A DNA stretch of 64,000 bases from Guillardia theta CCMP2712 (taxonomy: Eukaryota; Protista; Cryptophyta). The notes beneath the pieces were generated by a model. The model worked only from the letters and a program-made list of their open reading frames with translations, was not told where the DNA came from and made no database searches. The DNA lies in NCBI RefSeq assembly GCF_000315625.1, contig NW_005434631.1, positions 379,891 to 443,890 on the forward strand. Reading direction: 5' to 3'. Shown here piece by piece: positions 27,900 to 49,433 of this stretch (positions are counted from its first letter, which is position 1; the number at the start of each line of letters is the position of its first letter). The position numbers were made by a program, and so were the translations under genes.

Positions 27900-30800
27900 C
27901 GCTGAAGTACCCGGCGACTCCAGCCCTAGTAACCTTGATGACCTCACGAGTAGCCGTTAGCGCTGATCGTCCTTGGCACTCCTGCTGCTTTCCCTCCTCC
28001 CCCTCATCAATTCTTCCCTCCCTTCTTCTCTCCCTCCCTCCCTCCCTCCACTATCGTGAATGTTCCTAGTTTTCATCTGCTGACACTCTACCCAAGAAAT
28101 GGTTGATATGTCATCCAATGTGATTGAGACATCCAAAGGGAGAGGAATAAAAGAGAATTTTGAAGAGGGAGGTTATGTCAATCGAAGGAATGCGCGGGAG
28201 AACTAAAGCAAGGGCAAAAGGAACGGCATCACGATAGGCTTATTCCTATCATAATTGACTTCTTCTCACTCCTTTGATCATATCATCTCCCCCTCTCCTC
28301 TCCTCTCTCCCCCTCTCCTCTCCTCTCTCCCCCTCTCCTCTCCTCTCTCTCTCTCCCTCCCTCTCTAACGTCTCATCACAGCATGGCAACTCTCGGGTGG
28401 GTGCTAGGGATACTGAGAGGCAGCAATAGAGTCCGCCTCAGAAACTTGACTGTCAACTGGCAGCATCGCGGCCCGGAAACTCGGCGGCGAGGGCCCCCGG
28501 GCCCGGGCGCCCGGCCGGCCGGTCGGACCGTGACTCGGTGACCGTCCGGGCCTTCAGGCTTAGTGCGGACTGTTTGCTTCACTTGGAGCAGTACCGTCAG
28601 CTCCTTGTCGGGGGCGGGCTGCCCGGCTTGTTCATGCTTCAAGCCGGGAGTCAGAGTCTGCTTGAGGCACTTTTTACCGTTTGTGCGTCGCCGGGAGCAA
28701 ACCGTGGTCACCAGTACTGGCCTCAGCGGGCGCAGGGCAGCCGAGACCGAGACCGCCATTGACGGCGACGATGCCGCACTGCTATACAAGGACACGGAGC
28801 CTCAGAGAGGCCACTGGCTCTTCAAGATGCTTCCACCGCCGCCGTCCGACGGTCCGGCCGTCGGAGGAGTCCGAGTCCGAGACCACTCAGTGACGAGTGG
28901 GGGATGACGGTCTTGCTTGTTCCTGCTTTCCCTTATCATCGAGTAAAACTCAGCTCTCCTCTGGCGAAGACTCCGAGCGGTGACCCCTCGGGCGAGCTTC
29001 GAGTCCTGCTTTGTTTTGCTTGAGGCACTTTTTACCTTCTGCCAGTAAATCCATCGTCAACCGCTGACTCGGCTACCGCTGACTCGGAGGCTAGCGAGGA
29101 GGACTACCCCGAGCGGTACCGTGCTCCTGTGTCCAGCCTCCCTCCGTCCGCTGCCCCAGGCGGACCCCCGGGCAACTAGAGGCAACGCCGTTGCCCGGCT
29201 CCTTGTCGGCGGCTGCCCTTTCTCCGTCCGCGGCCGCCCGCTTTGTGGCGGCAGCGGACGTCTCGACTGACAGTGGTCAGTCGGCTGCCTCCGGGTATCG
29301 CGTCTAAGGGATTTTATTCCTCCTGCATGCTCCTGCTGCTTGTTGCTTGATTGCTTGACCCTTAGGCGGCTTGTGTTTTGTGTGTGATTGTGCAGCTTCT
29401 CGCTGTGCGCTGTGTGCAAGCCGGTTTAGCTTGTTCCTCAGCTTTGTTTTGCTGGCGGTGCCGCGTCTGGGTGCCAGCAGTGCTGGTTCTTTTCGGGCTT
29501 GTGTTTTGTGTGTGTTTGTGCAGCTTCTCGCTGTGCGCTGTGTGCCTGGAGGTTTAGCTTGTTCCTGCTTTGTTTTGCTTGAGGCACTTTTTACCTTCTG
29601 CCACTGAGTAAATCCGTAGTACTTTTGCTTGAGGCACTTTTTACCTTCTGCCAGTAAATCCTATCAGTACTATCCTCCACTTCATTTGGTATCTGGTGGA
29701 GGACATCATTGCTCAGCGCTCGATGCCTCTCGGGGATGTGGCACTTCATTCCTGATGATGGACCTGCTGTTCCATTACCTGCTGCTGAGGTCTTGCCACC
29801 GGCTCACGCAAACGCGCGGCCACCTACCAGTGCCTCACCATGCAGCTGACGCTGGAGGCGCTCCTGCCTGGTGCGAGGCGCATGACTCCCTTGCGCGCGC
29901 AGGCGCTCCTCGAGCCGGAGGACACCTCCTCCTCGGACTTTGTCCGGCGAGTCGCCCGAGGAGTCTTCGCGGGAGGTCCGACGGACTCCGTCGGTGGAAG
30001 CATCAAGAGTGCCGGGCGCTGGAGAGGGCCCTCAGCTGGTCCGAGCTCGCCTGCTTTCTCCCCCCCGACGGGGTCCTTGGGCACTGCTGCAGCGTCGTCG
30101 CCGTCAATGCGGCGGTCTCGGTCTCGGCGGCCGCTGCGCCCGCTGAGGACAGTGAGGAGGACTGTTTGCGAGTCTTGGCTCGCAAACGCGCGGCCACTCA
30201 ATAGGCACAGAGCACACAGAAACAAAGCGGTGTACGGAACACAGCAACAAATACACTGCCAGCCCACGCGGGAAGCCACGTAGACAGCAGAGAGGGGCAA
30301 GCAACGAGCACCGTGATACCGGCACAGCAGCGCGCTCCTCGAGCCAGAGGACACCTCCTCCTCAGACTTTGTCGAGTCCCGGATAAACCTCCTGGCACAC
30401 AGCGCACAGCGAGAAGCTGCACAATCACACACAAAACACAAGCCCGAAAACGTCTCATGAGCACTTCATTCCTCCGCCTGCGCAGCGAAATGTGACCCCT
30501 CTTGTCATGCGCGTCTTCCCTCGCCATGTGCATGCTCGCGCTGCGCTGACCGATCAGCAGCGTGATATCCTCACCTTGCACAGCCGCAGGACACACTCGC
30601 TCAAGTCGCAGGATAGGGTCTTGCAGTCTACCATCTTCGCTCATTTTCCTGAGCGTGACCTGAGCCACTCTCCGATGCGAGTCTCGAGCTACTACCCCCT
30701 CAAGGCCTTCCCGCACCGCTATGCTCAGATGCTCGACTGCTATCTCCATGGCATGCCGATCTGCCAGTGTCCGACGAAATGTGATGGATGTCAGCGCGAG

Positions 30801-31662
30801 CTCGATCCCTCCGTTGCTGCACTGATCAGCAAACGCCGATCCTCCAAGCTTCCCACGGCGCATGACAACCTTACTCGTACGATTCGGTCGATGCTGAACG
30901 AAGCTGGTCTTCTGCTGCTGGTCCGAGCTCGCCTGCTTCCTCCCCGGCATCGGTCGGGTCACGCCGGTCCTTGGGCATTGCTGCGGCGTCGCCGCCGTCA
31001 CGGGCGGCTACCGCTGACTCGGCTACCGCTGACTCGGAGGCTAGCGAGGAGGACTACCTCGAGCGGTACCGTGTTCCAGTGTCCAGCCTCCCTCCGTCCG
31101 CTGGGCCCCAGGCGGACCCCCGGGCAACGCCGGCTCCTTGTCGGCGGCTGCCCTTGCTCCGTCCGCGGCCGCCCGCTTTGTGGCGGCAGCGGACGTCTCG
31201 ACTGACAGTGGTCAGTCGGCTGCCTCCGGGTATCGCGTCTAAGGGATTTTATTCCTCCTGCATGCTCCTGCTGCTTGTTGCTTGATTGCTTGACCCTTAG
31301 GCTGCTTGTCTGCGCGGCTTCGCGCTTGGGCTGGCGATGCCGCGTCTGGGTGCCAGCAGTGCTGGTTCTTTTCGGGCTTGTGTTTTGTGTGTGATTGTGC
31401 AGCTTCTCGCTGTGCGCTGTGTGCCAGGAGGTTTAGCTTGTTCCTGCTTTGTTTTGCTTGAGGCACTTTTTACCTTCTGCCAGTAAATCCATCGTCGCTC
31501 CCATCCTCATGAAGGGCGATATCCACATCCCTGGAATCCGCGATCGAGGGTCCGAGCAGTACGAGGGCTTGATGGCGGACGTGACGTTGGTCCACCCTTA
31601 CATTGGTAGCTCTGCCGACCTGACCAAGTGGGGGGAGGTCCGAACCTCAGTCGACGCCCTCC

Positions 31663-33486
31663 ATGTTCCAGCGTCTGAGAAGATTCGCACAACCGCGCGG
31701 GCCGAGGGAGCAGCGGCAGTCCGGCCAATCGTCTCAGGAGTCTGAGCCTGCTCCTCCGCCGCGACCTACGCTGTCCCTCACCTCTGCGAGCGAGCGCCAA
31801 AGACAGTTGGCGATTCATCAGTTCACTGCGGGTGACCTTCATCGGGCGGTACGGACACTACTGAGCTCCGGCATCTACAGGGCTGAATCTTTTGCTGATC
31901 TTCTTGCTGAAGCACAAGAGAAGTTCCCTGATGGTGCGTCGCCTGCCTTTGGAAGTGCTTCCGCGGCTCATCTCACACAGCAAGCGCTTGCAGTACTGCA
32001 GGTGGATTTGACTGACATCCTCGACACCACTAGCCTGATCCAGGCGATCAAGCGCTACAGCTCCTTTGCGGGGACCGATGACCAAGGGTGGAGGATTCGG
32101 CAACACCTGTCACCCCTTTCTAGTCATCCTGCAGCTTTGAAGCTCTACTGCAAACATATCCTCCAAGGGGTCCTTCTTGGCCAAATGCCGGATCTTCTTA
32201 TTCCTGCCCTGTCAGCCATTCGTCGAGGAGGCAGATTTATTCCCCTCTCCAAGGGAGCTGATAAACCTGGTCTCCGGCCAATTGTCATCGGTTCTGCACA
32301 CCGTCGACTCGCGACGAAGCTTGCTTTGGCAGCGATTCGCTCATTTCTTGACCAGCACTTCCTCTCGTCTCACCCTCGAGCGATTCAGTTCGGACTCGAT
32401 CGAGACGGCTGTCTGAAGTTCTCGCAAACCGCGTCAGCGCTCCTGCCCCTTCACGCTCGCGGTGATGATGAGGATGTTGCCAACCCCACAGTGCTGGTGA
32501 GTTTGGATGCAAAGAACGCCTTCAACTCCCTCGACCGCCAGGCTCTCTTCGATGCAATCGAGGGACGTGCGAGTCGCGACTACTTTGATGGGAGCATCAC
32601 TGAAGGCGCTCGCTTGCCCTCTTGCGAGCATCTCCGTTTGTTCGCCTCCTACCTCTCCAGCTACTATGGAGACTCTGCTGACCTTCGACTCTTTCACAAA
32701 AGTCAGTCAGCCTCCGTTCAGTGTACCTCGGGCGTCTGTCAGGGCAATGTCCCCTCCAGCGTATTTTTCTGCCACAGTATCCACCCCCTGCTCCTCCATA
32801 TCGCAGAGCTTTTTCCCGCTGACAACGTCGTGCTTGTCGGCCCGGGTCCACTCGAGGATGCCGTTGCCGCTACGTCCGCTATGAAGAAGTACATGTTGGC
32901 TGATCTGAAGCTAGAGATTCAACCTCGCGAGTCGAAAGTTTACATCCCCTCCTGGCACCAACACCCTGATCTCTCGCAGCTGAAGAAGAGCCTTAAGCGC
33001 CGTCTCAAGACTCAACTTCTTCACTTCGAGGTCGTCACTGGCGGGATTACACTTGGCGGCCTGCCTATCGGCACGGATGGATTTCATGCTAGTCAGCTCC
33101 GAGCGAAGGTTTCTACCCTCAACGAAGAGCTCTCGAAGCTCGGGCTCGTCCAGCATGGCTTCATGTTCAAGACGCTGGTGAGGGCGAGCCATCTCCAGAA
33201 GCTGCGCTTCTTCCTCCAGGGGTCTTCTCCGTTTCTCCCGCGGGTCCAATCACACACGGGCTGGATTCGTCGCTTTGACCTCTCTGTCCACCTGGCGCTA
33301 GAGAAATACCACCGCTGGCCTTCCTCGCAGTACCTCGCCGCGCATCCCGACCTGCTAGAGTTTGCGAGGTTCAAGCGGGAGCTTCCGCATAGTCGGGGAG
33401 GGGACGAGTTCACGCCCTCTGAGGGTCTACACCCCGCTGTTTACTATACGGCTATCGCTCGCTTCCTCGCTTGGTACAGGCTCTGA
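31663..33486 (+). pseudogene. Non-LTR reverse transcriptase ORF, probably inactive
   Basis: FIPLSKG..GLRPIVIG..RRL, QFG, LVSLDAKNAFNSLDR, GVCQG, LEIQPRESK, LGGLPIG. The YxDD motif is reduced to FPADN. The ORF ends at a frameshift relative to the sister copy at 34660. Confidence 0.85.
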
Positions 33487-34238
33487 CCAGCCGATGTCCC
33501 GGATGTTGCCCTCTCCTCATAGCCTGGACGTTTCCTGCTTTGTTTTGCTTGAGGCACTTTTTACCTTCTGCCAGTAAATCCATTACCTGCCTGTTCACTG
33601 CTCGAGATCTCTCCGTGCCCAGAAGCATCCTCTGGCGACCTTCTTCGTTGAGGCGCACGACTTCGTTCATAATGCTGGAGCGATCCTCTACCGTCGTGTG
33701 AGGGCTCCTGCACCGGCTGCAGATGGCGCGGCGATCCCACCTGCCCCGGCTGCTGTGCCTGATGACGCAGGACGCCCCCCCGCTGTGTGCCTGGAGGTTT
33801 AGCTTGTTGCTGCTTTGTTTTGCTTGAGGCACTTTTTACCTTCTGCCAGTAAATCCACTACTGCCCCCCGGCATCTGTGGTACACATCCCTGGTTTGCGC
33901 GCTCTCGTCGACTCGTCTCATGAGCACTTCATTCCTCCGCCTGCGCAGCGAAATGTGACCCCTCTTGTCATGCGCGTCTTCCCTCGCCATGTGCATGCTC
34001 GCGCTGCGCTGACCGATCAGCAGCGTGATATCCTCACCTTGCACAGCCGCAGGACACACTCGCTCAAGTCGCAGGATAGGGTCTTGCAGTCTACCATCTT
34101 CGCTCATTTTCCTGAGCGTGACCTGAGCCACTCTCCGATGCGAGTCTCGAGCTACTACCCCCTCAAGGCCTGGCCGCACCGCTATGCTCAGATGCTCGAC
34201 TGCTATCTCCATGGCATGCCGATCTGCCATACCAGACG

Positions 34239-37092
34239 GATGCCGTTGCAGCTACGTCCGCTATGAAGAAGTACATGTTGGCTGATCTGAAGCTAGAGAT
34301 TCAACCTCGCGAGTCGAAAGTTTACATCCCCTCCTGGCATCAACACCCTGATCTCTCGCAGCTGAAGAAGAGCCTTAAGCGCCGTCTCAAGACTCAACTT
34401 CTTCACTTCGAGGTCGTCACTGGCGGGATTCTCCGTTTCTCCCGCGGGTCCAATCACAGATTCGTCGCTTTGACCTCTCTGTCCACCTGGCGCTTGAGAA
34501 ATACCACCGCTGGCCTTCCTCGCAGTACCTCGCCGCGCATCCCGACCTGCTAGAGTTTGCGAGGTTCAAGCGGGAGCTTCCGCATAGTCGGGGTGGGGAC
34601 GAGTTCACGCCCTCTGAGGGTCTACACCCCGCTGTTTACTATACGGCTATCGCTCGCTTCCTCGCTTGGTACTCTGACCAGCCCATGTCACGGACCCTGC
34701 CCTCTCCTCATAGCCTGGACGTTCACTGCTCGAGATCTCTCCGTGCCCAGAAGCATCCTCTGGCGACCTTCTTCGTTGAGGCGCACGACTTCGTTCATAA
34801 TGCTGGAGCGATCCTCTACCGTCGTGTGAGGGCTCCTGCACCGGCTGCAGATGGCGCGGCGATCCCACCTGCCCCGGCTGCTGTGCCTGATGACGCAGGC
34901 CGCCCCCCGGCATCTGTGGTACACATCCCTGGTTTGCGCGCTCTCGTCGACTCGTCTCATGAGCACTTCATTCCGCCGCCTGCGCAGCGAAATGTGACCC
35001 CTCTTGTCATGCGCGTCTTCCCTCGCCAGTGCAGCTTCTCGCTGTGGACTGTGTACCTGCCGGTTCAGCTTGTTCCTGCTTTGTTTTGCTTGAGGCACTT
35101 TTTATCTTCTGCCAGTAAATCCTATACCTCGCCATGTGCATGCTCGCGCTGCGCTGACCGATCAGCAGCGTGATATCCTCACCTTGCACAGCCGCAGGAC
35201 ACACTCGCTCAAGTCGCAGGATAGGGTCTTGCAGTCTACCATCTACTGTGTGCCTGCCGGTTCAGCTTGTTCATGCTTTGTTTTGCTTGAGGCACTTTTT
35301 ACCTTCTGCCAGTAAACCCTATGAATCTTCGCTCATTTTCCTGAGCGTGACCTGAGCCACTCTCCGATGCGAGTCTCGAGCTACTACCCCCTCAAGGCCT
35401 TCCCGCACCGCTATGCTCAGATGCTCGACTGCTATCTGGGTGCCAGCAGTGCTGGTTCTTTTCGGGCTTGTGTTTTGTGTGTGATTGTGCAGCTTCTCGC
35501 TGTGGACTGTGTGCCTGCCGGTTCAGCTTGTTCCTGCTTTGTTTTGCTTGAGGCACTTTTTACCTTCTGCCAGTAAATCCTATCACCTTTTGCCAGTAAA
35601 TCCTATCTCCATGGCATGCCGATCTGCCAGTGTCCGACGGAATGTGATGGATGTCAGCGCGAGCTCGACCCCTCCGTTGCTGCACATCCAGACCTGCAAA
35701 CGCCGATCCTCCAAGCTTCCCACGGCGCATGACAACCTTACTCGTACGATTCGGTCGATGCTGAACGAAGCTGGTCTTCAGAGCGTCATCGATACAGTGG
35801 GGGATCCTCGTTCTCGACGGCAGGTACCCTCCCATCCTCATGGCCGCAAGATGAAGGGCGATATCCACATTCCTGGAATCCGCGATCGAGGGTCTGAGTA
35901 AATCCTATACCCTGAGCAGTACGAGGGCTTGATGGCGGACGTGACGTTGGTCCACCCTTACATTGGTAGCTCTGCCGACCTGACCAAGTGGGGGGAGGTC
36001 AACCTCGACGCCCTCCATGTTGCAGCGTCTGAGAAGATTCGCAAACATCGCGCTGCATATGCCATGACTACTCCTCCTCGAGCGTTCATCCCTCTTGCCA
36101 TCTCGACGGACGGTGCCCTGCATCCTGACACCCTCCGCTTCATCTGGTATCTCGCGGACATCATTGCTCAGCGCTCAATGCCTCTTGAGGATGCGGCGTT
36201 TGGTCGGCACTTCGTGCCTGATGACGGACCTGCTGCTGAGGTCTTGGCTCGCAAACGCGCCGCCACCTATCAGCGCCTCACCATGCAGCTGACGCTGGAA
36301 GCGCTTGCGGGCGCAAGCACTTCTCGAGCCAGAGGACAGCTCCTCCTCGGACTTTGTCGAGTCGCCCGAGGAGTCTTCGCCGGAGGTCTCCGACTCCGAT
36401 GGGGGACACCCTTCGAGTGGCCCCGACGATCGGCGCGGAGCTGGCGAGGCGTCTCCGTCCCTCACTGTGACGTCGGGTGCCTCCGGAGAGCTCGACACCA
36501 CTGGGGTGCTTGCTGCTGGTCCGAGCTCGCCTGCTTCCTCCCCGGCATCGGTCGGGTCACGCCGGTCCTTGGGCATTGCCGCGGCGTCGCCGCCGTCACG
36601 GGCGGCTACCACTGACTTGGCTACCGCTGACTCGGAGGCTAGCGAGGAGGACTACCTCGAGCGGTACCGTGTTCATGTGTCCAGCCTCCCTCCGTCCGCT
36701 GCCCCAGGCGGACCCCCGGGCAACGCCGGCTCCTTGTCGGCGGCTGCCCTTTCTCCGTCCGCGGCCGCCCGCTTTGTGGCGGCAGCGGACGTCTCGACTG
36801 ACAGTGGTCAGTCGGCTGCCTCCGGGTATCGCGTCTAAGGGATTTTATTCCTCCTGCATGCTCCTGCTGCTTGTTGCTTGATTGCTTGACCCTTAGGCTG
36901 CTTGTCTGCGCGGCTTCGCGCTTGGGCTGGCGCTGCCGCGTCTGGGTGCCAGCAGTGCTGGTTGTTTTCGGGCTTGTGTTTTGTGTGTGATTGTGCAGCT
37001 TCTCGCTGTGGACTGTGTACCTGCCGGTTCAGCTTGTTCCTGCTTTGTTTTGCTTGAGGCACTTTTTATCTTCTGCCAGTAAATCCTATACC
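34239..37092 (+). mobile_element. 5'-truncated LINE copy with thumb, zinc knuckle, RLE and complete 3' UTR, interrupted by four self-insertions
   Basis: CDGC...HIQTC, AHDNL, KGDIHIPG, ADVTLVHP, EKIRKH, FIPLAISTDG (PD-(D/E)xK type), followed by a 3' region ending CAGTAAATCCTATACC. Confidence 0.85.
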
Positions 37093-39730
37093 GCTCTTGT
37101 CTGGTGCGAGGCGATAATGGATTTACTGGCAGAAGATAAAAAGTGCCTCAAGCAAAACAAAGCAGGAACAAGCTAAACCTCCTGGCACACAGCGCACAGC
37201 GAGAAGCTGCACAATCACACACAAAACACAAGCCCGAAAAGAACCAGCACTGCTGGCACCCAGACGCAGCCGAAGGGTCAAGCAATCAAGCAACAGCTCA
37301 TAGCAACAAGCAGCAGGAGCATGCAGGAGGAATAAAATCCCTTAGACGCGATACCCTCTGGTCTACGGATTTACTGGCAGAAGGTAAAAAGTGCCTCAAG
37401 CAAAACAAAGCAGGAACAAGCTAAACCTCCTGGCACACAGCGCACAGCGAGAAGCTGCACAATCACACACAAAACACAAGCCCGAAAAGAACCAGCACTG
37501 CTGGCAACCAGACGCGTGTGGTTCTGTACGGTACGGTACGTGCGCTTCCCCTCCTGCATGCTCCTGCTGCTTGTTGCTTGATTGCTTGACCCTTCGGCTG
37601 CTTGTCTGCGCGGCTTCGCGCTTGGGCTGGCGTTGCCAGCAGTGCTGGTTCTTTTCGGGCTTGTGTTTTGTGTGTGTTTGTGCAGCTTCTCGCTGTGCGC
37701 TGTGTGCAAGCAGGTTGGAGGTTTAGCTTGTTCCTGCTTTGTTTTGCTTGAGGCACTTTTTACCTTCTGCCAGTAAATCTTCCTTCCTTCCTCTGGCTCG
37801 AGAAGTGCTTGCGCGCGCAAGGGCGTCATGCGCCTCGCACCAGATAGGAGCGCCTCCAGCGTCAGCTGCATGGTGAGGCTGGCGATGCCGGGTCTGCTGA
37901 CGGTTGCCAGCAGTGCTATGTACGGATTTACTGGCAGAAGGTAAAAAGTGCCTCAAGCAAAACAAAGCAGGCCAGCACTGCTGGCACCCAGACGCGGCAC
38001 CAAGCAATCAAGCAACAAGCAGCAGGAGCATGCAGGAGGAAGAAAATCCCTTAGACGCGATACCCGGAGGCAGCCGTGGCTCAGGTCCCGCTCAGGAAAA
38101 TGAGCGAAGATGGTAGACTGCAAGCCAATCGTTGGTGTCGATAACCATGAAAGGATCCAATGCAGGTTTAGCTTGTTCCTGCTTTGTTTTGCTTGAGGCA
38201 CTTTTTACCTTCTGCCAGTAAATCTTTACTGAGCAATGTAGGGTGGAGCTGGGCGCATGCTGACGGTACCGCTCCAAGTAATGCAAACAGTCCTCCTCAC
38301 CTTTACTCGCTTTTTACCTTCTGCCAGTAAATCTCTTGCCCTCCGCATCTCAGTAAAGATTTACTGGCAGAAGGTAAAAAGTGCCTCAAGCAAGCAAAAC
38401 AAAGCAGGAACAAGCTAAACCTGCTTGCACACAGCGCAACCGTCAGCAGACCCGGCATCGCCAGCCCAAGCGCGAAGCCGCGCAGACAAGCAGCAGGAGC
38501 ATGCAGGAGGAATAAAATCCCTTAGACGCAATACCCGGAGGCAGCCGACTGACCACTGTCAGTCGAGACCGTCCGCTGCCTCCACAACTTGAAGCTGGCG
38601 GTCACGGACGGAGAAAGGGCAGCCGCCGACAAGGAGCCTGAGCCGGCGTTGCCCGGGGGTCGGAGCCGGCGTTGCCCGGGGGTCCGCCTGGGGCAGCGGA
38701 CGGAGGGAGGCTGGACACAGGAGCACGGTACCGCTCGAGGTAGTCCTCCTCGCTAGCCTCCGAGTCAGCGGTAGCGCCGTGGCAGAAGAGTACGCTGAAG
38801 CTGACTGATCCTTGTGAAAGAGGCGAAGGTCAGCAGAGTCTTGCTGCTTTCTTCTGCTTGAGGCAAAGGTGAAAAGCGGCAACAGCTGAGGACATTTAGG
38901 AGGAGCTGGAGAGCCTGATAGGAGGCGAACAACCGCCGGGAGAGCCTTGCTCGGAGAGCCTTGCTTTTGTCACAGTGTGTGTTTGTGCAGCTTCTCGCTG
39001 TGCGCTGTGTGCAAGCAGTTTTCGCTTGTTCCTGCTTTGTTTTGCTTGAGGCACTTTTTACCTTCTGCCAGTAAATCTTCGAATCTCGGAGGCTCGCAAC
39101 TGACGTCGGACCGTGCGGGCAAAACCGTACCGTACGGCGATGATGCTCCCCGGTCAAACTTTGAATAGCCCTGCCTGCGAACGAGTCGCCCTTCCCTCGA
39201 TGGAGTGGCATCACATGATGCCTCGTAGGAGCGCGGACGCGGTTTGTGACCGTCGGGGCCTTGGTCATCGGTGCCCGGCCCCGGCCGTCGGATTGAACTT
39301 AGGAGTGCCGCTGCTGTACGGTACGGTAGCGCTTGATCGCCGGGACGCTTCAGTAAGAAGATTAGCAAGAGTGTCAGCATGACGGTCTTGCTTGTTCCTG
39401 CTTTCTTCTGCTTGAGCACTGAAGTTTTACCTTATTAGTGCAAGGAACTTGAACCCGTTCACAGACTCAGAGGCCCTCGGAGGATCGGGCCCGGCCCTCT
39501 CAGTTAACGCCGGTTCGCTCGGATCCGACTCTGACGGTCTAGAATGTGCCGGTGCCGGCCTGGGCCTTGTTCTCCACCAGGAGGGGTACACCGTCCATAA
39601 TTACCTTATGTACCGGTATTTTTTAGTAGTGAGATTGGGGGTAGAGGGAGGACAGAGGAGTCAACGGGTAGGTGGGGGTGATATGTAGTTGTCCCTTCGC
39701 ACTGGCTCAACATGCGGTAGGTAGTCGACA

Positions 39731-40679: not shown

Positions 40680-43600
40680 TCCCTGTATACTGCTTGCGAC
40701 ATGCAGCAGCGCTCCTGCTCGAGGTGCAGCAGGAAGGCGTCCCTGATCGAACAAGTCACCTCCTGCGCGTACTAGTTCCTCCTTCCTCCTCTCCCTCACC
40801 AGTGACGGTCACTTGCAAGTGTCTTCGCGTCACCAACGACTATCATTCCTCGACGAGCACGAGTGACCTGCCGCCCAATCATCTCTCCTCTCACCGTCTC
40901 CTCTCCCCATCTGCTCTTCCCTTTCGAAGTTCTCTCCTCGTCTCTTGCTCTCCTATGCCCTTCTCGTCTCCTCTCCTTTGTATTCTTCCCCTTCGTCTAA
41001 TTCTCTCTTTCTATCATCTCCTCTTTTCCACTCTCGCTTCCTCTCCCTCCCCTCCTCTCCCCTCCTCTCCTCTTTCTGGTACTCACTGCCACGTTCAGTC
41101 GCCTCCAGTCCGCGAGGAAGCCCAAGCTGAGCTCTCGTCACAGGGCTCGCTCACTCGCCTGGTCTCACCTGCTCTCCGCGTTGCTGCGGACGGTCGACAT
41201 GAGGATGATCTCCTTCTCCCTCCCCTGCCGCCGCATCACTCCAGCTCGAGCGCGCACGACTCGCCTGAAAGCCGTCGACGGAGCTGATGTCCAGACCCTC
41301 CAGGGACGCCAGCGAGGACAAGTGAAGAGACTCACGGAGGAAGTTCACTTGAGCCGAGTAGGGGACGACAAGCCCTGCGGGGAGTCAGGAAGAGCTCGAG
41401 AGCATCCGCATGCTCGCCCAAGTCTCTCGTCTCGTGCCCGGCGGCCAGCAGATCCTGAAGGATCTGGAGAGACACGAGGGGAAGGAAGAGGGTGAGGCTG
41501 ACGACAAGGAAGCGAGGAGTATGGACTGAGAGCGTGGAGGCGGTTGAGCAAGAGGAGAGGAGGAGGAAGCGGTGGAGGAGGACGAAAAGGAAAACACCTC
41601 AAGGATGATTTGAGCTTGGGGGACGTTGAGGTAGCTGTTGCCGTCAGATGTCTGAATCTCATCTCCATTGAGCTGAGCCATCACTCATCAACTTCACAAT
41701 GGAGTACAGTTGAGGCCAGAGCATGGGGGAGAGAAGGAAGAGGAGGAGAAGAGAGAGGAGGAGAAGAGAGAGGAGGAGAAGAGAGAGGAGGAGAAGAGAG
41801 AGGAGGAGAAGAGAGAGGAGGAGAAGAGAGAGGAGGAGAAGGGAGAGGAGGAGAAGGGAGAGGAGGAGAAGGGGGAGGAGGATAAGGGAGAGGAGGAGAA
41901 GGGGGAGGAGGAGAAGAGAGAGGAGGAGAAGGGAGAGGAGGAGAAGGGAGAGGAGGAGAAGGGGGAGGAGGAGAAGGGGGAGGAGGAGAAGGGAGAGGAG
42001 GAGAAGAGAGAGGAGGAGAAGAGAGAGGAGGAGAAGAGAGAGGAGGAGAAGAGAGAGGAGGAGAAGGGGGAGGGTAGCAGGAGAGGGTCACTCAACCTCA
42101 TCTTGACGCACGTCGATGAAGACCAGCGGGTGATCCTCGCGCGGCCACGGGAACCCTCGAGGGATCGGGCGATCTTCTGCAGCATGAGGGTCAGCGAGAG
42201 GAGAGGAGGAAAAGCGACGCGCCGGGGAGGGGATGAGACTGGAGGGCGCCGTGATAGAAGCGACGAGAGCTGAAGTGAGCGAGGGCAGGATGCATTCGGA
42301 ACTGAGTCTGAAGCATCTTCAGCTCGTGCTTCCCTTGCTGAGCTCTCGTCAACAGTCGGACGCCCGTCCTCCCTTCACTTACCACCAAGCGAGTCAAGAG
42401 ACTGCGAGCCAAGCCTCCTCTCCTCGCCTTCCATCCTGTCACTAGTTCTCCTGCCCTCCCCTCCTCTACGGCACCTCCAGACTTGTCACCGTCGGCGGTA
42501 ACTGGCAGTGATCACCGATGAGAACAAGCTTCTGACGTCCAGATTGTCAGTCGGCTACGAATGGAGGAAGGGAGAGAGGAAAGTGAAAGGGAGGGAGGGA
42601 GGAAGGGAGGGATGATGTGGAAGATCATGTAGAAGAAAAGGAAAGCAGAAGAATGAAGGAGGAGAGGTCTCGTGACCTGGGCACCCTGAAGGAGGGGGAT
42701 AAGGAGAGACGGTTCAACAGCCTGCGAGGCTTCATCGACGATGATGGTGTGGAAGCGAAGCCTCTCGTGCTGCAGCATCGCTCGCAGCCCCTCATGTCCT
42801 GATCCTACCAGACTCGCCACTACCACATCCGCAGACCTGACAACTTGACCCGTCACCCCCTTCTTCTCCTCTCTTCTCCCTCCTCTTCTCATCCCCTCAC
42901 CCCCTCTCACTCCTCCTCTGCCCTAGTCACTCACCTTAAAATTCTTCCTCCCACCAAAGATCTCTCCATGGCAAGCTGACACAAGTCAGTCTTGAAGCAC
43001 AGGCGCTGCTGCCTCACCTTGGCTCTCACGGTCGCTCTCTCCTCCTCCGACAACGCCAGCACCAGCTCCTTTCTCAGCTCTCGCACTGTCGCCTCCTTCT
43101 CCATCAGAGCCTCGAGCGTCAGATGCCGCAGCTCAGCCTTCACTGCCGTCGCTCGTCCCACTACCACCACAAGTCAACACCACGATGCTGGTGCTGCTGG
43201 TGCTGCTGATTGTGTTGTACCTCTCACAGTTCGCAGCTTCAGGTCCACCAGCTTCTCCATCAGGTTGTCTGTCGCCGTGTTGGAATGAGCGCACGCCACG
43301 ATAAGCTCCCCCTCCAGCTCCTTTCGCAGCTGCTTCTCCAACACCAGCGCCTCAGCAAGGCATGACGCTGTGAGCGTCTTGCCAGTGCCTGGAGGTCCCT
43401 GGAGGATCGCGAGCGACCGAGTCATGGCCTCTCTCAGCGCCTCCTCCTGCGAGCTCACGAGCCCCCGACGCCTCGACACCAAGCGAGCGATGCGCCAAGC
43501 CTGATCGACCAAGAGTCGCTGCGAGGAGACAGAGGAGGAGGAGGAGGAGGAGGAGGAAGAACTTTCCATGGGCTGATGTTGTTCTGGGAAGGAAGAGCGA

Positions 43601-44728: not shown

Positions 44729-46618
44729 AGACAGCGAGGAGGAGGAGGAGGAAGGAAGAGAAGGAGGACAGACAGTGAGTGAGAATGAGAGCGGATAAAT
44801 GATTTAGCTGAGACAGAATGGAGATGATGTGAGATGAAGAGGTGAACACCGACAAGGGAATAGAAGAGATCATGAGCCGAGGCTCCTAATTTGGCTTGAG
44901 AACAACAGGAGAAGAGAAGGTGTCAAGCTTACCGAGCAGGTAAAGGAAATGAGTCACGTAGCTTCTCGTCATGTCAACGAGCTCATCCCGCTTTGGAGGT
45001 TTTCTAAGCTGTGAAACGTTGAGTGAGAGATGTACGCTCTTGTAGCAATTGAAACCTGCAACTCAGAAAACTCCACTGAGTTTACTTCTTGCTTGATATC
45101 GGACTTGTTCTTATCGTGCTGCTTGATATCAGACTTGTTCTTATCGTGCTGCTTGATATCAGACTTGTTCTTATCGTGCTGCTTGATATCGGACTTGTTC
45201 TTATCGTGCTGCTTGATATCAGACTTGTTCTTATCGTGCTGCTTGATATCAGACTTGTTCTTATCGTGCTGCTTGATACCAGACTTGTTCTTATCGTGCT
45301 GCTTGATATCGGACTTGTTCTTATCGTGCTGCTTGATATCAGACTTGTTCTTATCGTGCTGCTTGATATCAGACTTGTTCTTATCGTGCTGCTTGATATC
45401 GGACTTGTTCTTATCGTGCTGCTTGATATCAGACTTGTTCTTATCGTGCTGCTTGATATCGGACTTGTTCTTATCGTGCTGCTTGATATCAGACTTGTTC
45501 TTATCGTGCTGCTTGATATCGGACTTGTTCTTATCGTGCTGCTTGATATCAGACTTGTTCTTATCGTGCTGCTTGATATCGGACTTGTTCTTATCGTGCT
45601 GCTTGATATCGGACTTGCTCTTATCGTGCTGCTTGATATCGGACTTGTTCTTATCGTGCTGCTTGATATCGGACTTGTTCTTATCGTGCTGCTTGATATC
45701 AGACTTGTTCTATCGTGCTGCTTGATATCAGACTTGTTCTTATCGTGCTGCTTGATATCGGGACTTGTTCTTATCGTGCTGCTTGATATCAGACTTGTTC
45801 TTATCGTGCTGCTTGATATCGGACTTGTTCTTATCGTGCTGCTTGATATCAGACTTGTTCTTATCGTGCTGCTTGATATCGGACTTGTTCTTATCGTGCT
45901 GCTTGATATCAGACTTGTTCTTATCGTGCTGCTTGATATCGGACTTGTTCTTATCGTGCTGCTTGATATCAGACTTGTTCTTATCGTGCTGCTTGATATC
46001 AGACTTGTTCTTATCGTGCTGCTTGATATCAGACTTGTTCTTATCGTGCTGCTTGATATCGGACTTGTTCTTATCGTGCTGCTTGATATCAGACTTGTTC
46101 TTATCGTGCTGCTTGATATCAGACTTGTTCTTATCGTGCTGCTTGATATCAGACTTGTTCTTATCTTGCTGCTTGATATCGGACTTGTTCTTATTGTGCT
46201 GCTTGATATCGGACTTGCTCTTATCGTGCTGCTTGATATCGGACTTGTTCTTATTGTGCTGCTTGATATCAGACTTGCTTGTTGCGTCTTCTTCCCTCTC
46301 CAAGCCTTGCACTGGTGCAGCATCTACTATCTCGAGCTCGTTCCGCAGGCTGCTGCTGACTTTCGTGCTGAGGAAGAAACGTGCTGCTCGTCTGCTTCTG
46401 TCCGCCATCTCCCAGCTTAGGCGACAAGCACGATGAGGATGGAGCGGAGCCATGCGCGGGAAGACTGAGAGGGAAGGAAGACAAACAAACGGAGAGGTGG
46501 CGGGGAGGAGGCAGAGAAGAAGAAACAACTTCTTCCTCTTGTTTCTGCCCATCCCCACTAAGAATACCTGCCACAAGCTCATCACACCCTCAGTTCCCAG
46601 CTCACCTCTTGCCCTCAC
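40680..46618 (-). CDS. Superfamily 1 UPF1-like (IGHMBP2/DNA2-NAM7) helicase, multi-exon, with probable N-terminal decapeptide repeat
   Basis: ILQGPPGTGKT, CAHSNTATDNL, IIVDEASQAVEPSLLIPL, LIGDHCQLPP, LQTQFRMHP, VVPYSAQV, SSVDGFQ. The 5' boundary is uncertain. Confidence 0.85.
41740..42070. repeat. 15-bp purine-rich intronic repeat (GAGGAGGAGAAG[A/G]G[A/G]), ~22 copies
   Basis: Directly visible within a helicase intron. Confidence 0.9.
45090..46277. repeat. 30-bp minisatellite, ~39 copies, encoding KSDIKQHDKN on the minus strand
   Basis: Unit GCTTGATATC[A/G]GACTTGTTCTTATCGTGCT. Confidence 0.97.
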
Positions 46619-46814: not shown

Positions 46815-48499
46815 ACTAGCAGCTCTTGTCGTCTACTAGCAGCTCTTGTCGTCTACTAGCAGCTCTTGTCGTCTACTAGCAGCTCTTGTCGTCTACTAGC
46901 AGCTCTCATCGTCTACTAGCAGCTCTTGTCGTCTACTAGCAGCTCTTGTCGTCTACTAGCAGCTCTTATCGTCTACTAGCAGCTCTTGTCGTCTACTAGC
47001 AGCTCTCGTCGTCTACTAGCAGCTCTCATCGTCTACTAGCAGCTCTCATCGTCTACTAGCAGCTCTTGTCGTCTACTAGCAGCTCTTGTCGTCTACTAGC
47101 AGCTCTTATCGTCTACTAGCAGCTCTTGTCGTCTACTAGCAGCTCTTGTCGTCTACTAGCAGCTCTCATCGTCTACTAGCAGCTCTTATCGTCTACTAGC
47201 AGCTCTCGTCGTCTACTAGCAGCTCTTATCGTCTACTAGCAGCTCTCGTCGTCTACTAGCAGCTCTCATCGTCTACTAGCAGCTCTCATCGTCTACTAGC
47301 AGCTCTCGGTCGTCTACTAGCAGCTCTCATCGTCTACTAGCAGCTCTTATCGTCTACTAGCAGCTCTCATCGTCTACTAGCAGCTCTCATCGTCTACTAG
47401 CAGCTCTTATCGTCTACTAGCAGCTCTCATCGTCTACTAGCAGCTCTTGTCGTCTACTAGCAGCTCTCATCGTCTACTAGCAGCTCTCATCGTCTACTAG
47501 CAGCTCTTATCGTCTACTAGCAGCTCTCATCGTCTACTAGCAGCTCTCATCGTCTACTAGCAGCTCTTATCGTCTACTAGCAGCTCTCATCGTCTACTAG
47601 CAGCTCTCATCGTCTACCAGCAGCTCTTATCGTCTACTAGCAGCTCTTGTCGTCTACCAGCAGCTCTCATCGTCTACTAGCAGCTCTTATCGTCTACTAG
47701 CAGCTCTTGTCGTCTACCAGCAGCTCTCATCGTCTACTAGCAGCTCTCATCGTCTACTAGCAGCTCTTATCGTCTACTAGCAGCTCTCATCGTCTACTAG
47801 CAGCTCTTATCGTCTACTAGCAGCTCTTATCGTCTACTAGCAGCTCTTGTCGTCTACTAGCAGCTCTCATCGTCTACTAGCAGCTCTTATCGTCTACTAG
47901 CAGCTCTCGTCGTCTACTAGCAGCTCTTATCGTCTACTAGCAGCTCTCGTCGTCTACTAGCAGCTCTCATCGTCTACTAGCAGCTCTCATCGTCTACTAG
48001 CAGCTCTCGTCGTCTACTAGCAGCTCTCATCGTCTACTAGCAGCTCTTATCGTCTACTAGCAGCTCTCATCGTCTACTAGCAGCTCTCATCGTCTACTAG
48101 CAGCTCTTATCGTCTACTAGCAGCTCTCATCGTCTACTAGCAGCTCTTGTCGTCTACTAGCAGCTCTCATCGTCTACTAGCAGCTCTCATCGTCTACTAG
48201 CAGCTCTTATCGTCTACTAGCAGCTCTCATCGTCTACTAGCAGCTCTCATCGTCTACTAGCAGCTCTTATCGTCTACTAGCAGCTCTCATCGTCTACTAG
48301 CAGCTCTGATCGTCTACCAGCAGCTCTTATCGTCTACTAGCAGCTCTTGTCGTCTACCAGCAGCTCTCATCGTCTACTAGCAGCTCTTATCGTCTACTAG
48401 CAGCTCTTATCGTCTACTAGCAGCTCTTGTCGTCTACCAGCAGCTCTCATCGTCTACTAGCAGCTCTCATCGTCTACTAGCAGCTCTTATCGTCTACTA
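46815..48499. repeat. 20-bp minisatellite, ~84 copies (ACTAGCAGCTCT[T/C][G/A]TCGTCT)
   Basis: Tandem array with four main unit variants; no ORFs. Confidence 0.97.
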
Positions 48500-49433
48500 C
48501 AAGCTCTCGCCTTGGATCCTTGCGGCAACCCCCGCTCGGTCTGGTCTCGGCACCACCCCCTTTGCTTCCCTTTACCACACCCCTTGGTTTCAGCCGTTTC
48601 GGTACTGCAGCCGGTTCAGGGAGGGAGAGGAGGGAGGGAGAGGAAGGAGGGAGAGGAAGGAGGGAGAGGAGGGGATCGGGGGGAAGTGGGAGAGAGGGAG
48701 GAAGGAAGGGAGAGATCAGCGCAGTTGAGAGCGAAGGGAGGGAAGGGAGGAAGAGACTGGGAGAGAGATAGGGGGGAAGTGGGGAGGGGAGGGAGGGAGG
48801 AGGAGGGAGGAAGGGAAGGAATAAATGAAAACTGGTTTTTAGTGTTTGTAACATCATCGAAACAAATATGAACATCAGGGAGAGGAAAGTGAGAAAGAAA
48901 AAGGTGATTCGAGTGATAGCTAAACGAGGACAGAGTGGCAGAAAGGGAGAAGCTCGATTCAAGGTTCCGAGATGAGATTAGACGAGATGGAGGGAAGGAC
49001 GCAATACTATCTTGTATGTCGGGAAAGGAAGGTGGTCAAATAAAGGACACCACGACAAGTTGTATGTGTCTGGTTTCACTCGTGAGATCTTGATTTATTC
49101 ATTCGCAACCAACAGTTTGAGATGAGCGCCAGCGCTGGTCCTGGCTGTGTTATATCTCCATTGATACATGGTTTGACTTTGAGGTGCAGAAGGCGGACCA
49201 AGGGATGTCAGAAGCTGGCGGTGGTAAACTGGCAGAGATCTTGGCCAAGAAAAGAGCAGCCAGGGAAAAAGCCAGGGAGGAGGACAATGTTTCGATCTCG
49301 AGGAACGCATCTTCCAACGTTGGTGAGATGAAGTTGATATCAACTAGATCAACTGATTGATCAAAAGTCATGAGCTCAAGTCTGACGTGTTAGATCAGAT
49401 CAAAACGAATCGGAAGACGATGAAAGAAGGTCC

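What the first reader, a model, noticed from the sequence alone, without database searches (positions are those of the whole stretch)
33530..35916. Six TSD-flanked micro-insertions of the 3' terminus into the element's own ORF, with no shared target sequence
Seen by comparing sister copies that keep the empty site: insert 33533-33592 (TSD GTT), 33781-33862 (GCCCCCC), 35029-35126 (CCTCGCCA), 35245-35324 (ATCT), 35438-35602 (CTATCT; contains a second mini-terminus) and 35899-35911 (CTGAG). Removing each insert plus one TSD restores the coding sequence found at 30490-30770, 31540 and 34700-34930. TSDs of 3-8 bp with unrelated sequence, all inserts in sense orientation. Inference: these are genuine integration events rather than assembly noise, made by a relaxed-specificity endonuclease or at pre-existing breaks, and each disrupts the copy it hits.
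Basis: seen in the sequence. Interest (0 to 1): 0.82.

Follow-up and report, generated by a model that had tools for sequence, protein, structure and literature searches.

The report
Aborted LINE insertions nested in own copies
Six tiny, duplication-flanked copies of a jumping gene's tail really do sit inside dead copies of that same jumping gene in the alga Guillardia theta; they are the footprints of retrotransposition attempts that stopped after 8-170 bases, a known mechanism seen here in unusually clear and extreme form.

Summary
Observation confirmed.

The element is a non-LTR retrotransposon of Guillardia theta. Its reverse transcriptase is followed by a CCHC knuckle and an R2-type restriction-like endonuclease, supported by a profile match to solved R2 proteins (E=2e-5) and by a fold match.

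The inserts are extreme 5'-truncated target-primed reverse transcription products. The same events recur in nine other islands:
- 33-35 nested events, 8-475 nt long (first 24: median 81 nt).
- TSDs peak at 5-7 bp (n=28).
- Variable tails of about 4-12 nt follow the fixed end GTAAATCC.
- Double termini occur.
- No target consensus emerged.

All 110 termini lie within 1 kb of element sequence; none lies in the 133 kb further away.

The window's all-sense pattern is not general (elsewhere 16 sense : 10 antisense). The host copies were already defective. Cis self-insertion is not supported. The six exact junctions could not be checked in raw reads.

The scan noted similar scars on another piece of this genome (s1-435498). 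Verdict: a new member of a known kind, moderately interesting.

The parts
31688..34229 (+). Host copy A of the LINE (reference positions 347-2738: RT and linker). Defective: chimeric 5' end, 4-bp frameshift near 33477, truncated at 34229. Carries ins1 and ins2.
   Evidence: Colinear with L001 at 97-99% identity; RT ORF 31663-33486.
33533..33592 (+). ins1: about 49 nt of the 3' terminus plus tail ATTACCTGCCT. TSD GTT at 33530-33532 and 33593-33595.
   Evidence: empty site in copy B at 34718-34723.
33781..33862 (+). ins2: about 76 nt of the terminus plus tail ACTACT. TSD GCCCCCC at 33774-33780 and 33863-33869.
   Evidence: empty in copy B (about 34900) and in L001.
34238..37092 (+). Host copy B: 5'-truncated copy (reference 1530 to the 3' end) with a 176-bp internal deletion at 34430. 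Carries ins3-ins6. Its own 3' end is ...GTAAATCC + TATACC at 37079-37092.
   Evidence: loose ends at 34430 in runs X1, X4 and X13 show other copies without the deletion.
35029..35126 (+). ins3: 94 nt of the terminus plus tail TATA. TSD CCTCGCCA at 35021-35028 and 35127-35134. 100% identical to copy B's own 3' end (36993-37092).
   Evidence: empty at 30519 and 33982. The same site is hit in the opposite orientation in L006.
35245..35324 (+). ins4: about 75 nt of the terminus (private variants) plus tail TATGA. TSD ATCT at 35241-35244 and 35325-35328.
   Evidence: empty at 30633 and 34096.
35438..35602 (+). ins5: 143-nt terminus plus TATC, followed by a second 19-nt mini-terminus (35585-35603). 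Nominal TSD CTATCT at 35432-35437 and 35603-35608; it overlaps the element end, so the true TSD is 2-6 bp.
   Evidence: the empty form is seen in copy C (30745) and in a contig of run X4.
35899..35911 (+). ins6: only 7 nt of the terminus (TAAATCC) plus tail TATACC. TSD CTGAG at 35894-35898 and 35912-35916. Introduces an in-frame TAA.
   Evidence: empty at 31552. Both TSD copies share a T that the sister copy lacks.
35603..36190 (+). Coding region for the CCHC knuckle and restriction-like endonuclease in copy B (interrupted by ins6).
   Evidence: Alignment A3 with invariant D/D/K; profile match to R2 proteins; fold match.
30451..31496 (+). Copy C: 5'-truncated copy with an internal deletion that keeps the empty sites of ins3, ins4 and ins5. 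3' end GTAAATCC + ATCGTC.
31509..31693 (+). Fragment D of the endonuclease region, which keeps the empty site of ins6.
29454..29622 (+). Seventh nested event in the window: a terminus of about 160 nt plus tail GTAGTAC, inserted into another terminus. TSD TTTTGCT at 29447-29453 and 29623-29629.
28400..39430 (.). The whole island of nested element fragments. It holds all 18 core termini of the 64-kb window.

Best explanation
The six inserts are separate, DNA-level integration events of a Guillardia theta non-LTR retrotransposon (RT + CCHC + R2-type restriction-like endonuclease). Each event aborted almost at once.

Proposed steps:
1. The element's ribonucleoprotein nicks one DNA strand with little sequence preference.
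2. The freed 3'-OH primes reverse transcription at the fixed 3' end of the element RNA (...GCCAGTAAATCC, usually followed by TAT/ATT and a few variable, probably untemplated, nucleotides).
3. Synthesis stops after only 7-170 nt.
4. The second strand is cut about 6 bp away. Repair then leaves a 3-9 bp target-site duplication around a fragment with an intact 3' end and a truncated 5' end.
5. Tandem 'double termini' arise when the RT jumps from the end of one short template onto the 3' end of another.

The targets are older, already defective copies of the same family, because insertion of this family is confined to family-specific islands.

Shown: the anatomy of the events, their recurrence, the endonuclease type, and the island confinement in the sampled 247 kb.

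Inferred: that the element's own enzyme makes both nicks, that the tail nucleotides are untemplated, and the cause of island confinement.
For: **The events themselves.** Filled and empty sites align precisely, with exact TSDs. Every insert ends at the same element position while the 5' ends vary.

**Recurrence.** There are 33-35 analogous nested events in nine other G. theta loci, including inserts of 8-14 nt.

**TSD lengths.** The distribution is peaked: 3 bp (3 events), 4 (4), 5 (6), 6 (7), 7 (5), 8 (2), 9 (1). Two events show small target deletions instead.

**Orientation.** Antisense nested events with TSDs exist. These cannot arise by cDNA template switching on sense RNA.

**TSD variants.** In ins6 and in L012-14384 both TSD copies share a variant absent from sister copies or the reference.

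**Independent data.** Run X1 shows at least 15 listed (and 29 unlisted) joints from a terminus end, through 2-18 filler letters, to scattered internal element positions.

**Endonuclease identity.** The C-terminal domain profile hits R2 proteins: 9dou_A at E=2.2e-5, 9nl3_A at 5.5e-5, 9nl2_A at 7e-4. The AlphaFold model has pLDDT 84.5, and its top seven Foldseek hits are all R2 proteins. D, D and K are invariant across 41 relatives. RVT_1 lies upstream.

**Island confinement.** All 110 termini lie within 1 kb of element body sequence.
Against: - The six exact junctions were not verified in raw reads. The only runs available were Logan contigs, and the output did not list bridging records for them.
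- All seven window events are sense-oriented. This differs from the first five other islands (Fisher p=0.02) and is not explained by the model.
- ins3 is 100% identical to its host's own 3' end, which would also fit a single-event template-switch origin.
- No enzymology exists for this element. That its own endonuclease makes both nicks is inferred.
- The ins5 TSD is ambiguous.
Confidence: 0.85

Rival explanations
1. Single-event mosaics. The inserts arose at the cDNA level while the host copy itself was being reverse-transcribed. The RT left the ORF template, copied the 3' end of another element RNA, and returned a few bases downstream of its exit point, producing a pseudo-TSD.
For: - All window events are sense-oriented.
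- ins3 and ins6 share the subfamily variant and/or the TATAC tail with copy B's own 3' end.
- The insert 5' ends of ins1-3 show weak similarity to the sequence just after the TSD.
- Double termini show that template jumping does happen.
Against: - At least ten antisense nested events with the same TSDs and tails occur elsewhere.
- Returns would have to land 3-9 nt downstream of the exit nearly every time. Only 2 small deletions are seen against 28 duplications.
- The A+T haplotype and the TATAC tail occur in independent loci. One match in six inserts is expected by chance with p=0.31.
- Copies A and B share about 98% identity but none of the inserts.
Confidence: 0.06
2. Endonuclease-independent capture. 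Short cDNA or RNA fragments of the element's 3' end were patched into pre-existing DNA breaks or nicks during repair.
For: - No target consensus was found.
- Variable filler nucleotides sit at the 3' junction.
- Two events have small target deletions.
- Small TSD-like duplications with non-terminus filler also occur in the islands.
Against: - Every insert has the complete 3' end. Endonuclease-independent insertions (as established for L1) are typically 3'-truncated and lack TSDs.
- TSD length is peaked at 5-7 bp, which indicates a fixed nick geometry.
- The element encodes an apparently intact endonuclease with invariant catalytic D/D/K.
Confidence: 0.06
3. Assembly or cloning artefact in the draft genome.
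For: The islands are repeat-rich and often lie at scaffold ends. The six junctions themselves were not seen in independent reads.
Against: - Mis-assembly does not create exact target duplications around inserts that always end at one nucleotide position.
- The same class of junction appears in ten loci and in an independent DNA run.
Confidence: 0.02

Closest known systems
R2 and other RLE-encoding LINEs (CRE, R2, R4, NeSL, HERO clades)
   Same: Single RT ORF followed by a CCHC knuckle and a PD-(D/E)xK endonuclease. Also shared: a fixed 3' end without poly(A), variable 5' truncation, extra nucleotides at the 3' junction, and tandem termini of the kind expected from R2-type end-to-end template jumping (established R2 biochemistry; my knowledge).
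   Different: There is no sequence-specific target; four of the five RLE clades are mostly target-specific (PMC4640811). No N-terminal zinc-finger or Myb domain was detected by Pfam in the 1511-aa relative. The RT is very divergent: there was no PDB hit by single-sequence search. Clade placement by RT phylogeny was not done.
HERO clade (largely non-site-specific RLE LINEs)
   Same: An RLE LINE without a strict target sequence (PMC4640811).
   Different: Membership untested. HERO elements are not known (to me) to be confined to islands of their own copies.
Zepp / ZeppL LINE clusters of green algae
   Same: LINE copies accumulate as nested clusters of the same family, about one per chromosome, at putative centromeres (PMC3446292). 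Here all 110 termini lie in family islands, and 25 gene models lie on 25 different scaffolds.
   Different: ZeppL elements are described as LINE1-type (title of bioRxiv 10.1101/2025.03.28.645958), not RLE-type, so the resemblance is functional and not homology. One island per chromosome and a centromere association are untested in G. theta.
Short L1-mediated retro-pseudogenes (<=300 bp, TSD-flanked)
   Same: Very short TPRT products with intact 3' ends and TSDs, attributed to truncated or degraded templates (PMC2831318).
   Different: Those end in poly(A) and are made by an APE-type LINE with longer TSDs (my knowledge). Here the unique non-poly(A) end lets inserts as short as 7-14 nt be recognised.
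Utopia in Nasonia
   Same: The 3' ends are flanked either by the target gene or by other copies of the element (PMC4640811).
   Different: Utopia targets a defined U2 snRNA site. The G. theta element hits many different positions of its own sequence in both orientations.

Membership tests
Non-LTR (LINE) retrotransposon inserting by target-primed reverse transcription | Encodes a reverse transcriptase | tested here: met
   RVT_1 scores 33.3 bits (cut-off 29.6) in P0003, and 28.5-28.7 bits in P0002 and P0028. Motifs LDAKNAFNS and YADN are visible.
Non-LTR (LINE) retrotransposon inserting by target-primed reverse transcription | Fixed 3' end, variable 5' truncation, short TSDs, no LTRs | tested here: met
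   62 termini, later 110, all end at GTAAATCC, and their 5' starts form a ladder. There are 28 TSDs of 3-9 bp. No long terminal direct repeats appear in the repeat scan.
RLE-encoding LINEs (R2 supergroup) | CCHC motif and PD-(D/E)xK restriction-like endonuclease C-terminal to the RT | tested here: met
   D108/D128/K160 are invariant or nearly so, and a C..C..H..C knuckle is present. hmmsearch against PDB: R2Tg E=2.2e-5, two further R2 proteins at 5.5e-5 and 7e-4, R2Bm 0.027. The top 7 Foldseek hits are all R2.
RLE-encoding LINEs (R2 supergroup) | No N-terminal apurinic/apyrimidinic-type endonuclease | tested here: met
   Pfam finds only RVT_1 in the 1511-aa relative P0028. However, the G. theta copies in hand lack the first ~350 residues.
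R2 clade proper | Insertion at a specific 28S rDNA site | tested here: not met
   The targets are scattered positions of the element's own sequence, with no rDNA context.
R2 / CRE / R4 / NeSL (target-specific clades) | Conserved target sequence at insertion sites | tested here: not met
Site coincidences (5 pairs within 10 bp) do not exceed the 3-4.4 expected (my count).
HERO or any specific RLE clade | Placement in the RT phylogeny with reference elements | not tested
Zepp-like centromeric LINE clusters | Nested clusters made of the same family | tested here: met
   Islands of 5-17 kb at ten loci. All 110 termini lie within 1 kb of element body, and none in 133 kb elsewhere.
Zepp-like centromeric LINE clusters | One cluster per chromosome, coincident with the centromere (CENH3) | not testable with these tools
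   Only a hint: 25 element gene models lie on 25 different scaffolds. No chromosome-scale assembly or ChIP data were to hand.

The most novel reading that the evidence does not exclude
This RLE LINE has exchanged sequence-specific targeting for region-specific 'self-homing'. Its ribonucleoprotein would be recruited to islands made of its own copies, nick there with almost no sequence preference, and mostly abort. The recruiting signal could be chromatin or centromere identity, or recognition of the DNA form of its own terminus. The islands would then grow as scar fields of micro-insertions and could mark G. theta centromeres or heterochromatin. The local all-sense pattern in this window (7:0) would reflect a strand-biased step such as transcription through the target copy.
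Probability: 0.3. Interest if true: 0.65.

Novelty: new member of a known kind. Interest (0 to 1): 0.45.

Why it matters
**Detectability.** The element ends in a unique sequence instead of poly(A), so even 7-14-nt products of target-primed reverse transcription can be recognised with both junctions. This gives a natural record of where first- and second-strand nicks fall (stagger about 6 bp), how initiation adds extra nucleotides, how often the RT jumps templates, and how early synthesis fails (median insert about 80 nt).

**Target choice.** It also shows an RLE-type LINE from a cryptophyte, a lineage whose LINEs my four literature searches did not find described. This element is relaxed at the nucleotide level yet strictly confined to islands of its own family. 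That bears on the idea that early RLE LINEs survived in compact protist genomes through target specificity (PMC4640811).

**Practical use.** The islands are candidates for centromere or heterochromatin markers in G. theta.

Tried and rejected
1. **Cis self-insertion (scan note s1-431666).** The ins3/host haplotype (two variants) and the TATAC tail occur in other loci. One match among six inserts has p=0.31. Not supported.
2. **Template-switch-only origin.** Rejected as the general mechanism because antisense events with TSDs exist.
3. **Target hot spots.** Three independent hits fall at REF 3051-3061, and ins3 shares its site with an antisense event. Overall there are 5 site pairs within 10 bp against 3-4.4 expected. 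Not significant.
4. **Nucleosome-like spacing of termini.** The 200-300 bp spacing in the window is not seen across loci.
5. **A structured 3'-terminal RNA.** MFE z-score +0.47.
6. **5'-junction microhomology.** The values were 0-3 nt (mean 1.0, n=6), too few to judge.
7. **Searches that gave nothing.** The single-sequence PDB search found no hits. Single-sequence AlphaFold gave pLDDT 35. Pfam found nothing on the C-terminal pieces.
8. **Protein atlas.** It gave only sub-threshold zf-RVT leads.
9. **Literature.** Searches for a prior description of G. theta LINEs found none.
10. **Scan notes by sequence.** This look-up returned nothing.
Full report
**1. Observation**

The motif TTGAGGCACTTTTTACCTTCTGCCAGTAAATCC occurs 16 times (up to 3 mismatches) in the window, against 0 expected. 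All copies lie between 29 and 39 kb.

| Event | TSD |
|---|---|
| ins1 | GTT |
| ins2 | GCCCCCC |
| ins3 | CCTCGCCA |
| ins4 | ATCT |
| ins5 | CTATCT |
| ins6 | CTGAG |

- For ins6, both duplicated copies carry a T where the sister copy has C, as expected if the target itself was duplicated.
- For ins5, the nominal TSD overlaps the element's own ...CC+TAT end, so the real duplication may be 2-6 bp. This insert holds a second, 19-nt terminus.
- A seventh event of the same kind lies at 29454-29622, with TSD TTTTGCT.

**2. What the element is**

The 607-aa ORF at 31663-33486 matches many 'reverse transcriptase' gene models of Guillardia theta CCMP2712. The window is therefore cryptophyte nuclear DNA.

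- A 97%-identical contig (L001) carries an uninterrupted 947-aa ORF (P0002). It is colinear with the window copies and empty at all six sites.
- A 70%-identical relative from another sample (P0028, 1511 aa) shows that the family ORF is longer at both ends. The G. theta copies in hand begin near its residue 352-371.
- Pfam finds RVT_1 and nothing else.
- The C-terminal domain was left open by Pfam, by a single-sequence PDB search and by single-sequence folding. I therefore ran the exhaustive search on it.
- Forty-one relatives share a C..C..H..C knuckle, an HD motif, GD, DVT..HP and K..KH, with D, D and K invariant or nearly so.
- Their profile hits the C-terminal part of solved R2 proteins: 9dou_A at E=2.2e-5, 9nl3_A at 5.5e-5, 9nl2_A at 7e-4, and R2Bm 8gh6_A at 0.027.
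- An AlphaFold model built with that alignment (pLDDT 84.5) has R2 proteins as its seven best Foldseek hits, followed by other PD-(D/E)xK nucleases.

The element is thus a LINE with an R2-type restriction-like endonuclease (RLE).

**3. Architecture of the finding region**

- Copy A (31688-34229) carries ins1 and ins2.
- Copy B (34238-37092) is 5'-truncated at reference position 1530, has a 176-bp internal deletion, and carries ins3-ins6.
- Copy C (30451-31496) and fragment D (31509-31693) keep the empty sites.
- A and B are about 98% identical where they overlap but share no insert.
- The host copies were already non-functional, so the 'disruption' has no functional consequence.
- The inserts add 63, 89, 106, 84, 171 and 18 bp (with ins3 corrected by direct reading). 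ins6 brings an in-frame TAA.

**4. The phenomenon is general**

I built a 4,099-bp reference (L001 plus the window's 3' end) and scanned the window and nine other G. theta loci, 247 kb in total.

- **Counts and lengths.** They hold 110 core termini. In the first sample of 62, the 5' starts form a ladder heavily skewed to short lengths.
- **Nested events.** In 33-35 cases both flanks are adjacent positions of the element. The inserts are 8-475 nt long; the median of the first 24 is 81 nt.
- **Ultra-short inserts.** Five further inserts of 8-14 nt resemble ins6.
- **TSDs (n=28).** Counts are 3 bp (3 events), 4 (4), 5 (6), 6 (7), 7 (5), 8 (2) and 9 (1). The mean is 5.6. Two events show 4-5 bp target deletions instead.
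- **Tails.** After GTAAATCC come about 4-12 further nucleotides. They begin with TAT in 29 of 62 cases and ATT in 12 of 62, and are variable thereafter.
- **Double termini.** Tandem termini recur: ins5, the window at 29608/29654, L006-9892 and L006-22496.
- **Independent run.** DNA run X1 lists at least 15 shown (plus 29 unshown) joints from a terminus end, through 2-18 filler letters, to scattered internal element positions. Run X4 carries the empty ins5 site.
- **Limit.** These runs are Logan contigs, and the output did not let me verify the six specific junctions.

**5. Orientation, targets and confinement**

- **Orientation.** Outside the window the count is 16 sense to 10 antisense (p=0.33). 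With the window's 7:0 it becomes 23:10-12 (p=0.035-0.09). The all-sense pattern is therefore local, and a mild overall sense excess cannot be excluded.
- **Targets.** Target sites read by eye show no consensus at either nick.
- **Coincident sites.** Several sites coincide. ins3 and an antisense event in L006 share one site. Three independent events fall at reference 3051-3061. ins2 and L004-5387 lie 10 bp apart. Even so, 5 pairs within 10 bp compares with 3-4.4 expected.
- **Confinement.** All 110 termini lie within 1 kb of element body sequence. None lies in the 133 kb farther away (P about 1e-37 under uniform insertion). The loci were chosen because they contain the element, but their flanks are an unbiased sample of other DNA.

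**6. Mechanism**

The fixed 3' end, variable 5' end, peaked short TSDs, extra 3'-junction nucleotides and tandem termini are the signature of target-primed reverse transcription by an R2-like enzyme. In these cases it aborted after 7-170 nt.

The antisense cases show that integration is into DNA and not a by-product of cDNA template switching. The peaked TSD length and the always-complete 3' ends argue against capture at random pre-existing breaks.

The reason for island confinement is not established. Region-level targeting seems more likely to me than purifying selection alone, because micro-insertions of tens of bases should be tolerated in introns and intergenic DNA. This is inference.

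**7. Ideas tested and dropped**

- Cis self-insertion (scan note s1-431666): p=0.31.
- Regular spacing of termini.
- A structured 3' RNA: z-score +0.47.
- Significant hot spots (see section 5).

**8. Comparison with what is known**

The element works like R2 in enzyme architecture and junction features, but it fails the target-specificity criterion of the R2, CRE, R4 and NeSL clades (PMC4640811). Placement in HERO or elsewhere needs an RT phylogeny that I could not run.

The self-nesting islands resemble the Zepp clusters of green algae (PMC3446292). Those are LINE1-type elements, so the resemblance is functional.

Very short TSD-flanked TPRT products are known for L1-mobilised mRNAs (PMC2831318).

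I found no description of this family in the searchable literature. A first-stage note on another piece of the same genome (s1-435498) independently proposed 'abortive TPRT scars'. I did not test that stretch.

**9. Verdict**

The finding is a clear and extreme example of a known process in an undescribed LINE family. It is a new member of a known kind and of moderate interest. The open and more interesting question is what confines a sequence-relaxed RLE LINE to its own islands.

Noticed in passing
L001 (ENA metagenome contig), L002 (JGI metagenome 3300013126); runs X2, X3, X5, X8-X11, X25-X32: Lake, freshwater, runoff and 'aquatic' metagenomes hold about 35-53% of the 31-mers of this stretch from the marine alga G. 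theta. Metagenome contigs carry the element at 90-97% identity with intact ORFs. Possible explanations are wild cryptophyte relatives with a very similar LINE, horizontal spread, or contamination.
   Followed up: no
window 37079-37126; L004 7220-7468 and 16192-16440: Termini occur tail-to-tail in inverted orientation, separated by only 19-33 nt. Distances under 50 bp between neighbouring termini are over-represented (11 of 66).
   Followed up: partly
reference positions 3939-4076 (termini in the window and L003-L007): The 5' truncation points cluster at lengths of about 25, 38, 49, 61, 74, 93 and 148 nt rather than being smooth. Possible causes are RT pause sites, RNA cleavage sites or microhomology. 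This was not tested for significance, and some pairs are segmental duplicates.
   Followed up: no
L003 10047-10056; L006 22244-22259; L004 16948-16957: Small insertions in element copies are not terminus-derived but look like a short filler plus a 5-bp duplication of the target. They could be TPRT attempts that added only untemplated nucleotides.
   Followed up: no
proteins P0001-P0029: 25 G. theta gene models of this element lie on 25 different scaffolds. This hints at roughly one island per scaffold or chromosome, as reported for Zepp.
   Followed up: no
P0081 (1577 aa): A distant relative of the endonuclease domain sits at the C-terminus of a protein whose N-terminus is a ubiquitin C-terminal hydrolase (UCH, E=4e-29). 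This is either a gene-model fusion or a domesticated RLE.
   Followed up: no
window 5594-6882, 45090-46277, 46815-48508, 41731-42073: Long, very regular minisatellites with units of 40, 30, 20 and 15 bp (23-85 copies, 94-97% matches) lie outside the island.
   Followed up: no
window 317-616 and 3994-4293: A 300-bp direct repeat, 100% identical, with copies 3.7 kb apart.
   Followed up: no
window 29596-29615: One terminus has CTGA inserted just before GTAAATCC (GCCA-CTGA-GTAAATCC). This gives the same CTGAGTAAATCC string as the left junction of ins6. It may be coincidence or a shared event type.
   Followed up: no
L004 5387-5580: An antisense nested insertion (TSD TGTGTAC) is followed by an extra 33-bp tandem duplication of the target sequence.
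   Followed up: no
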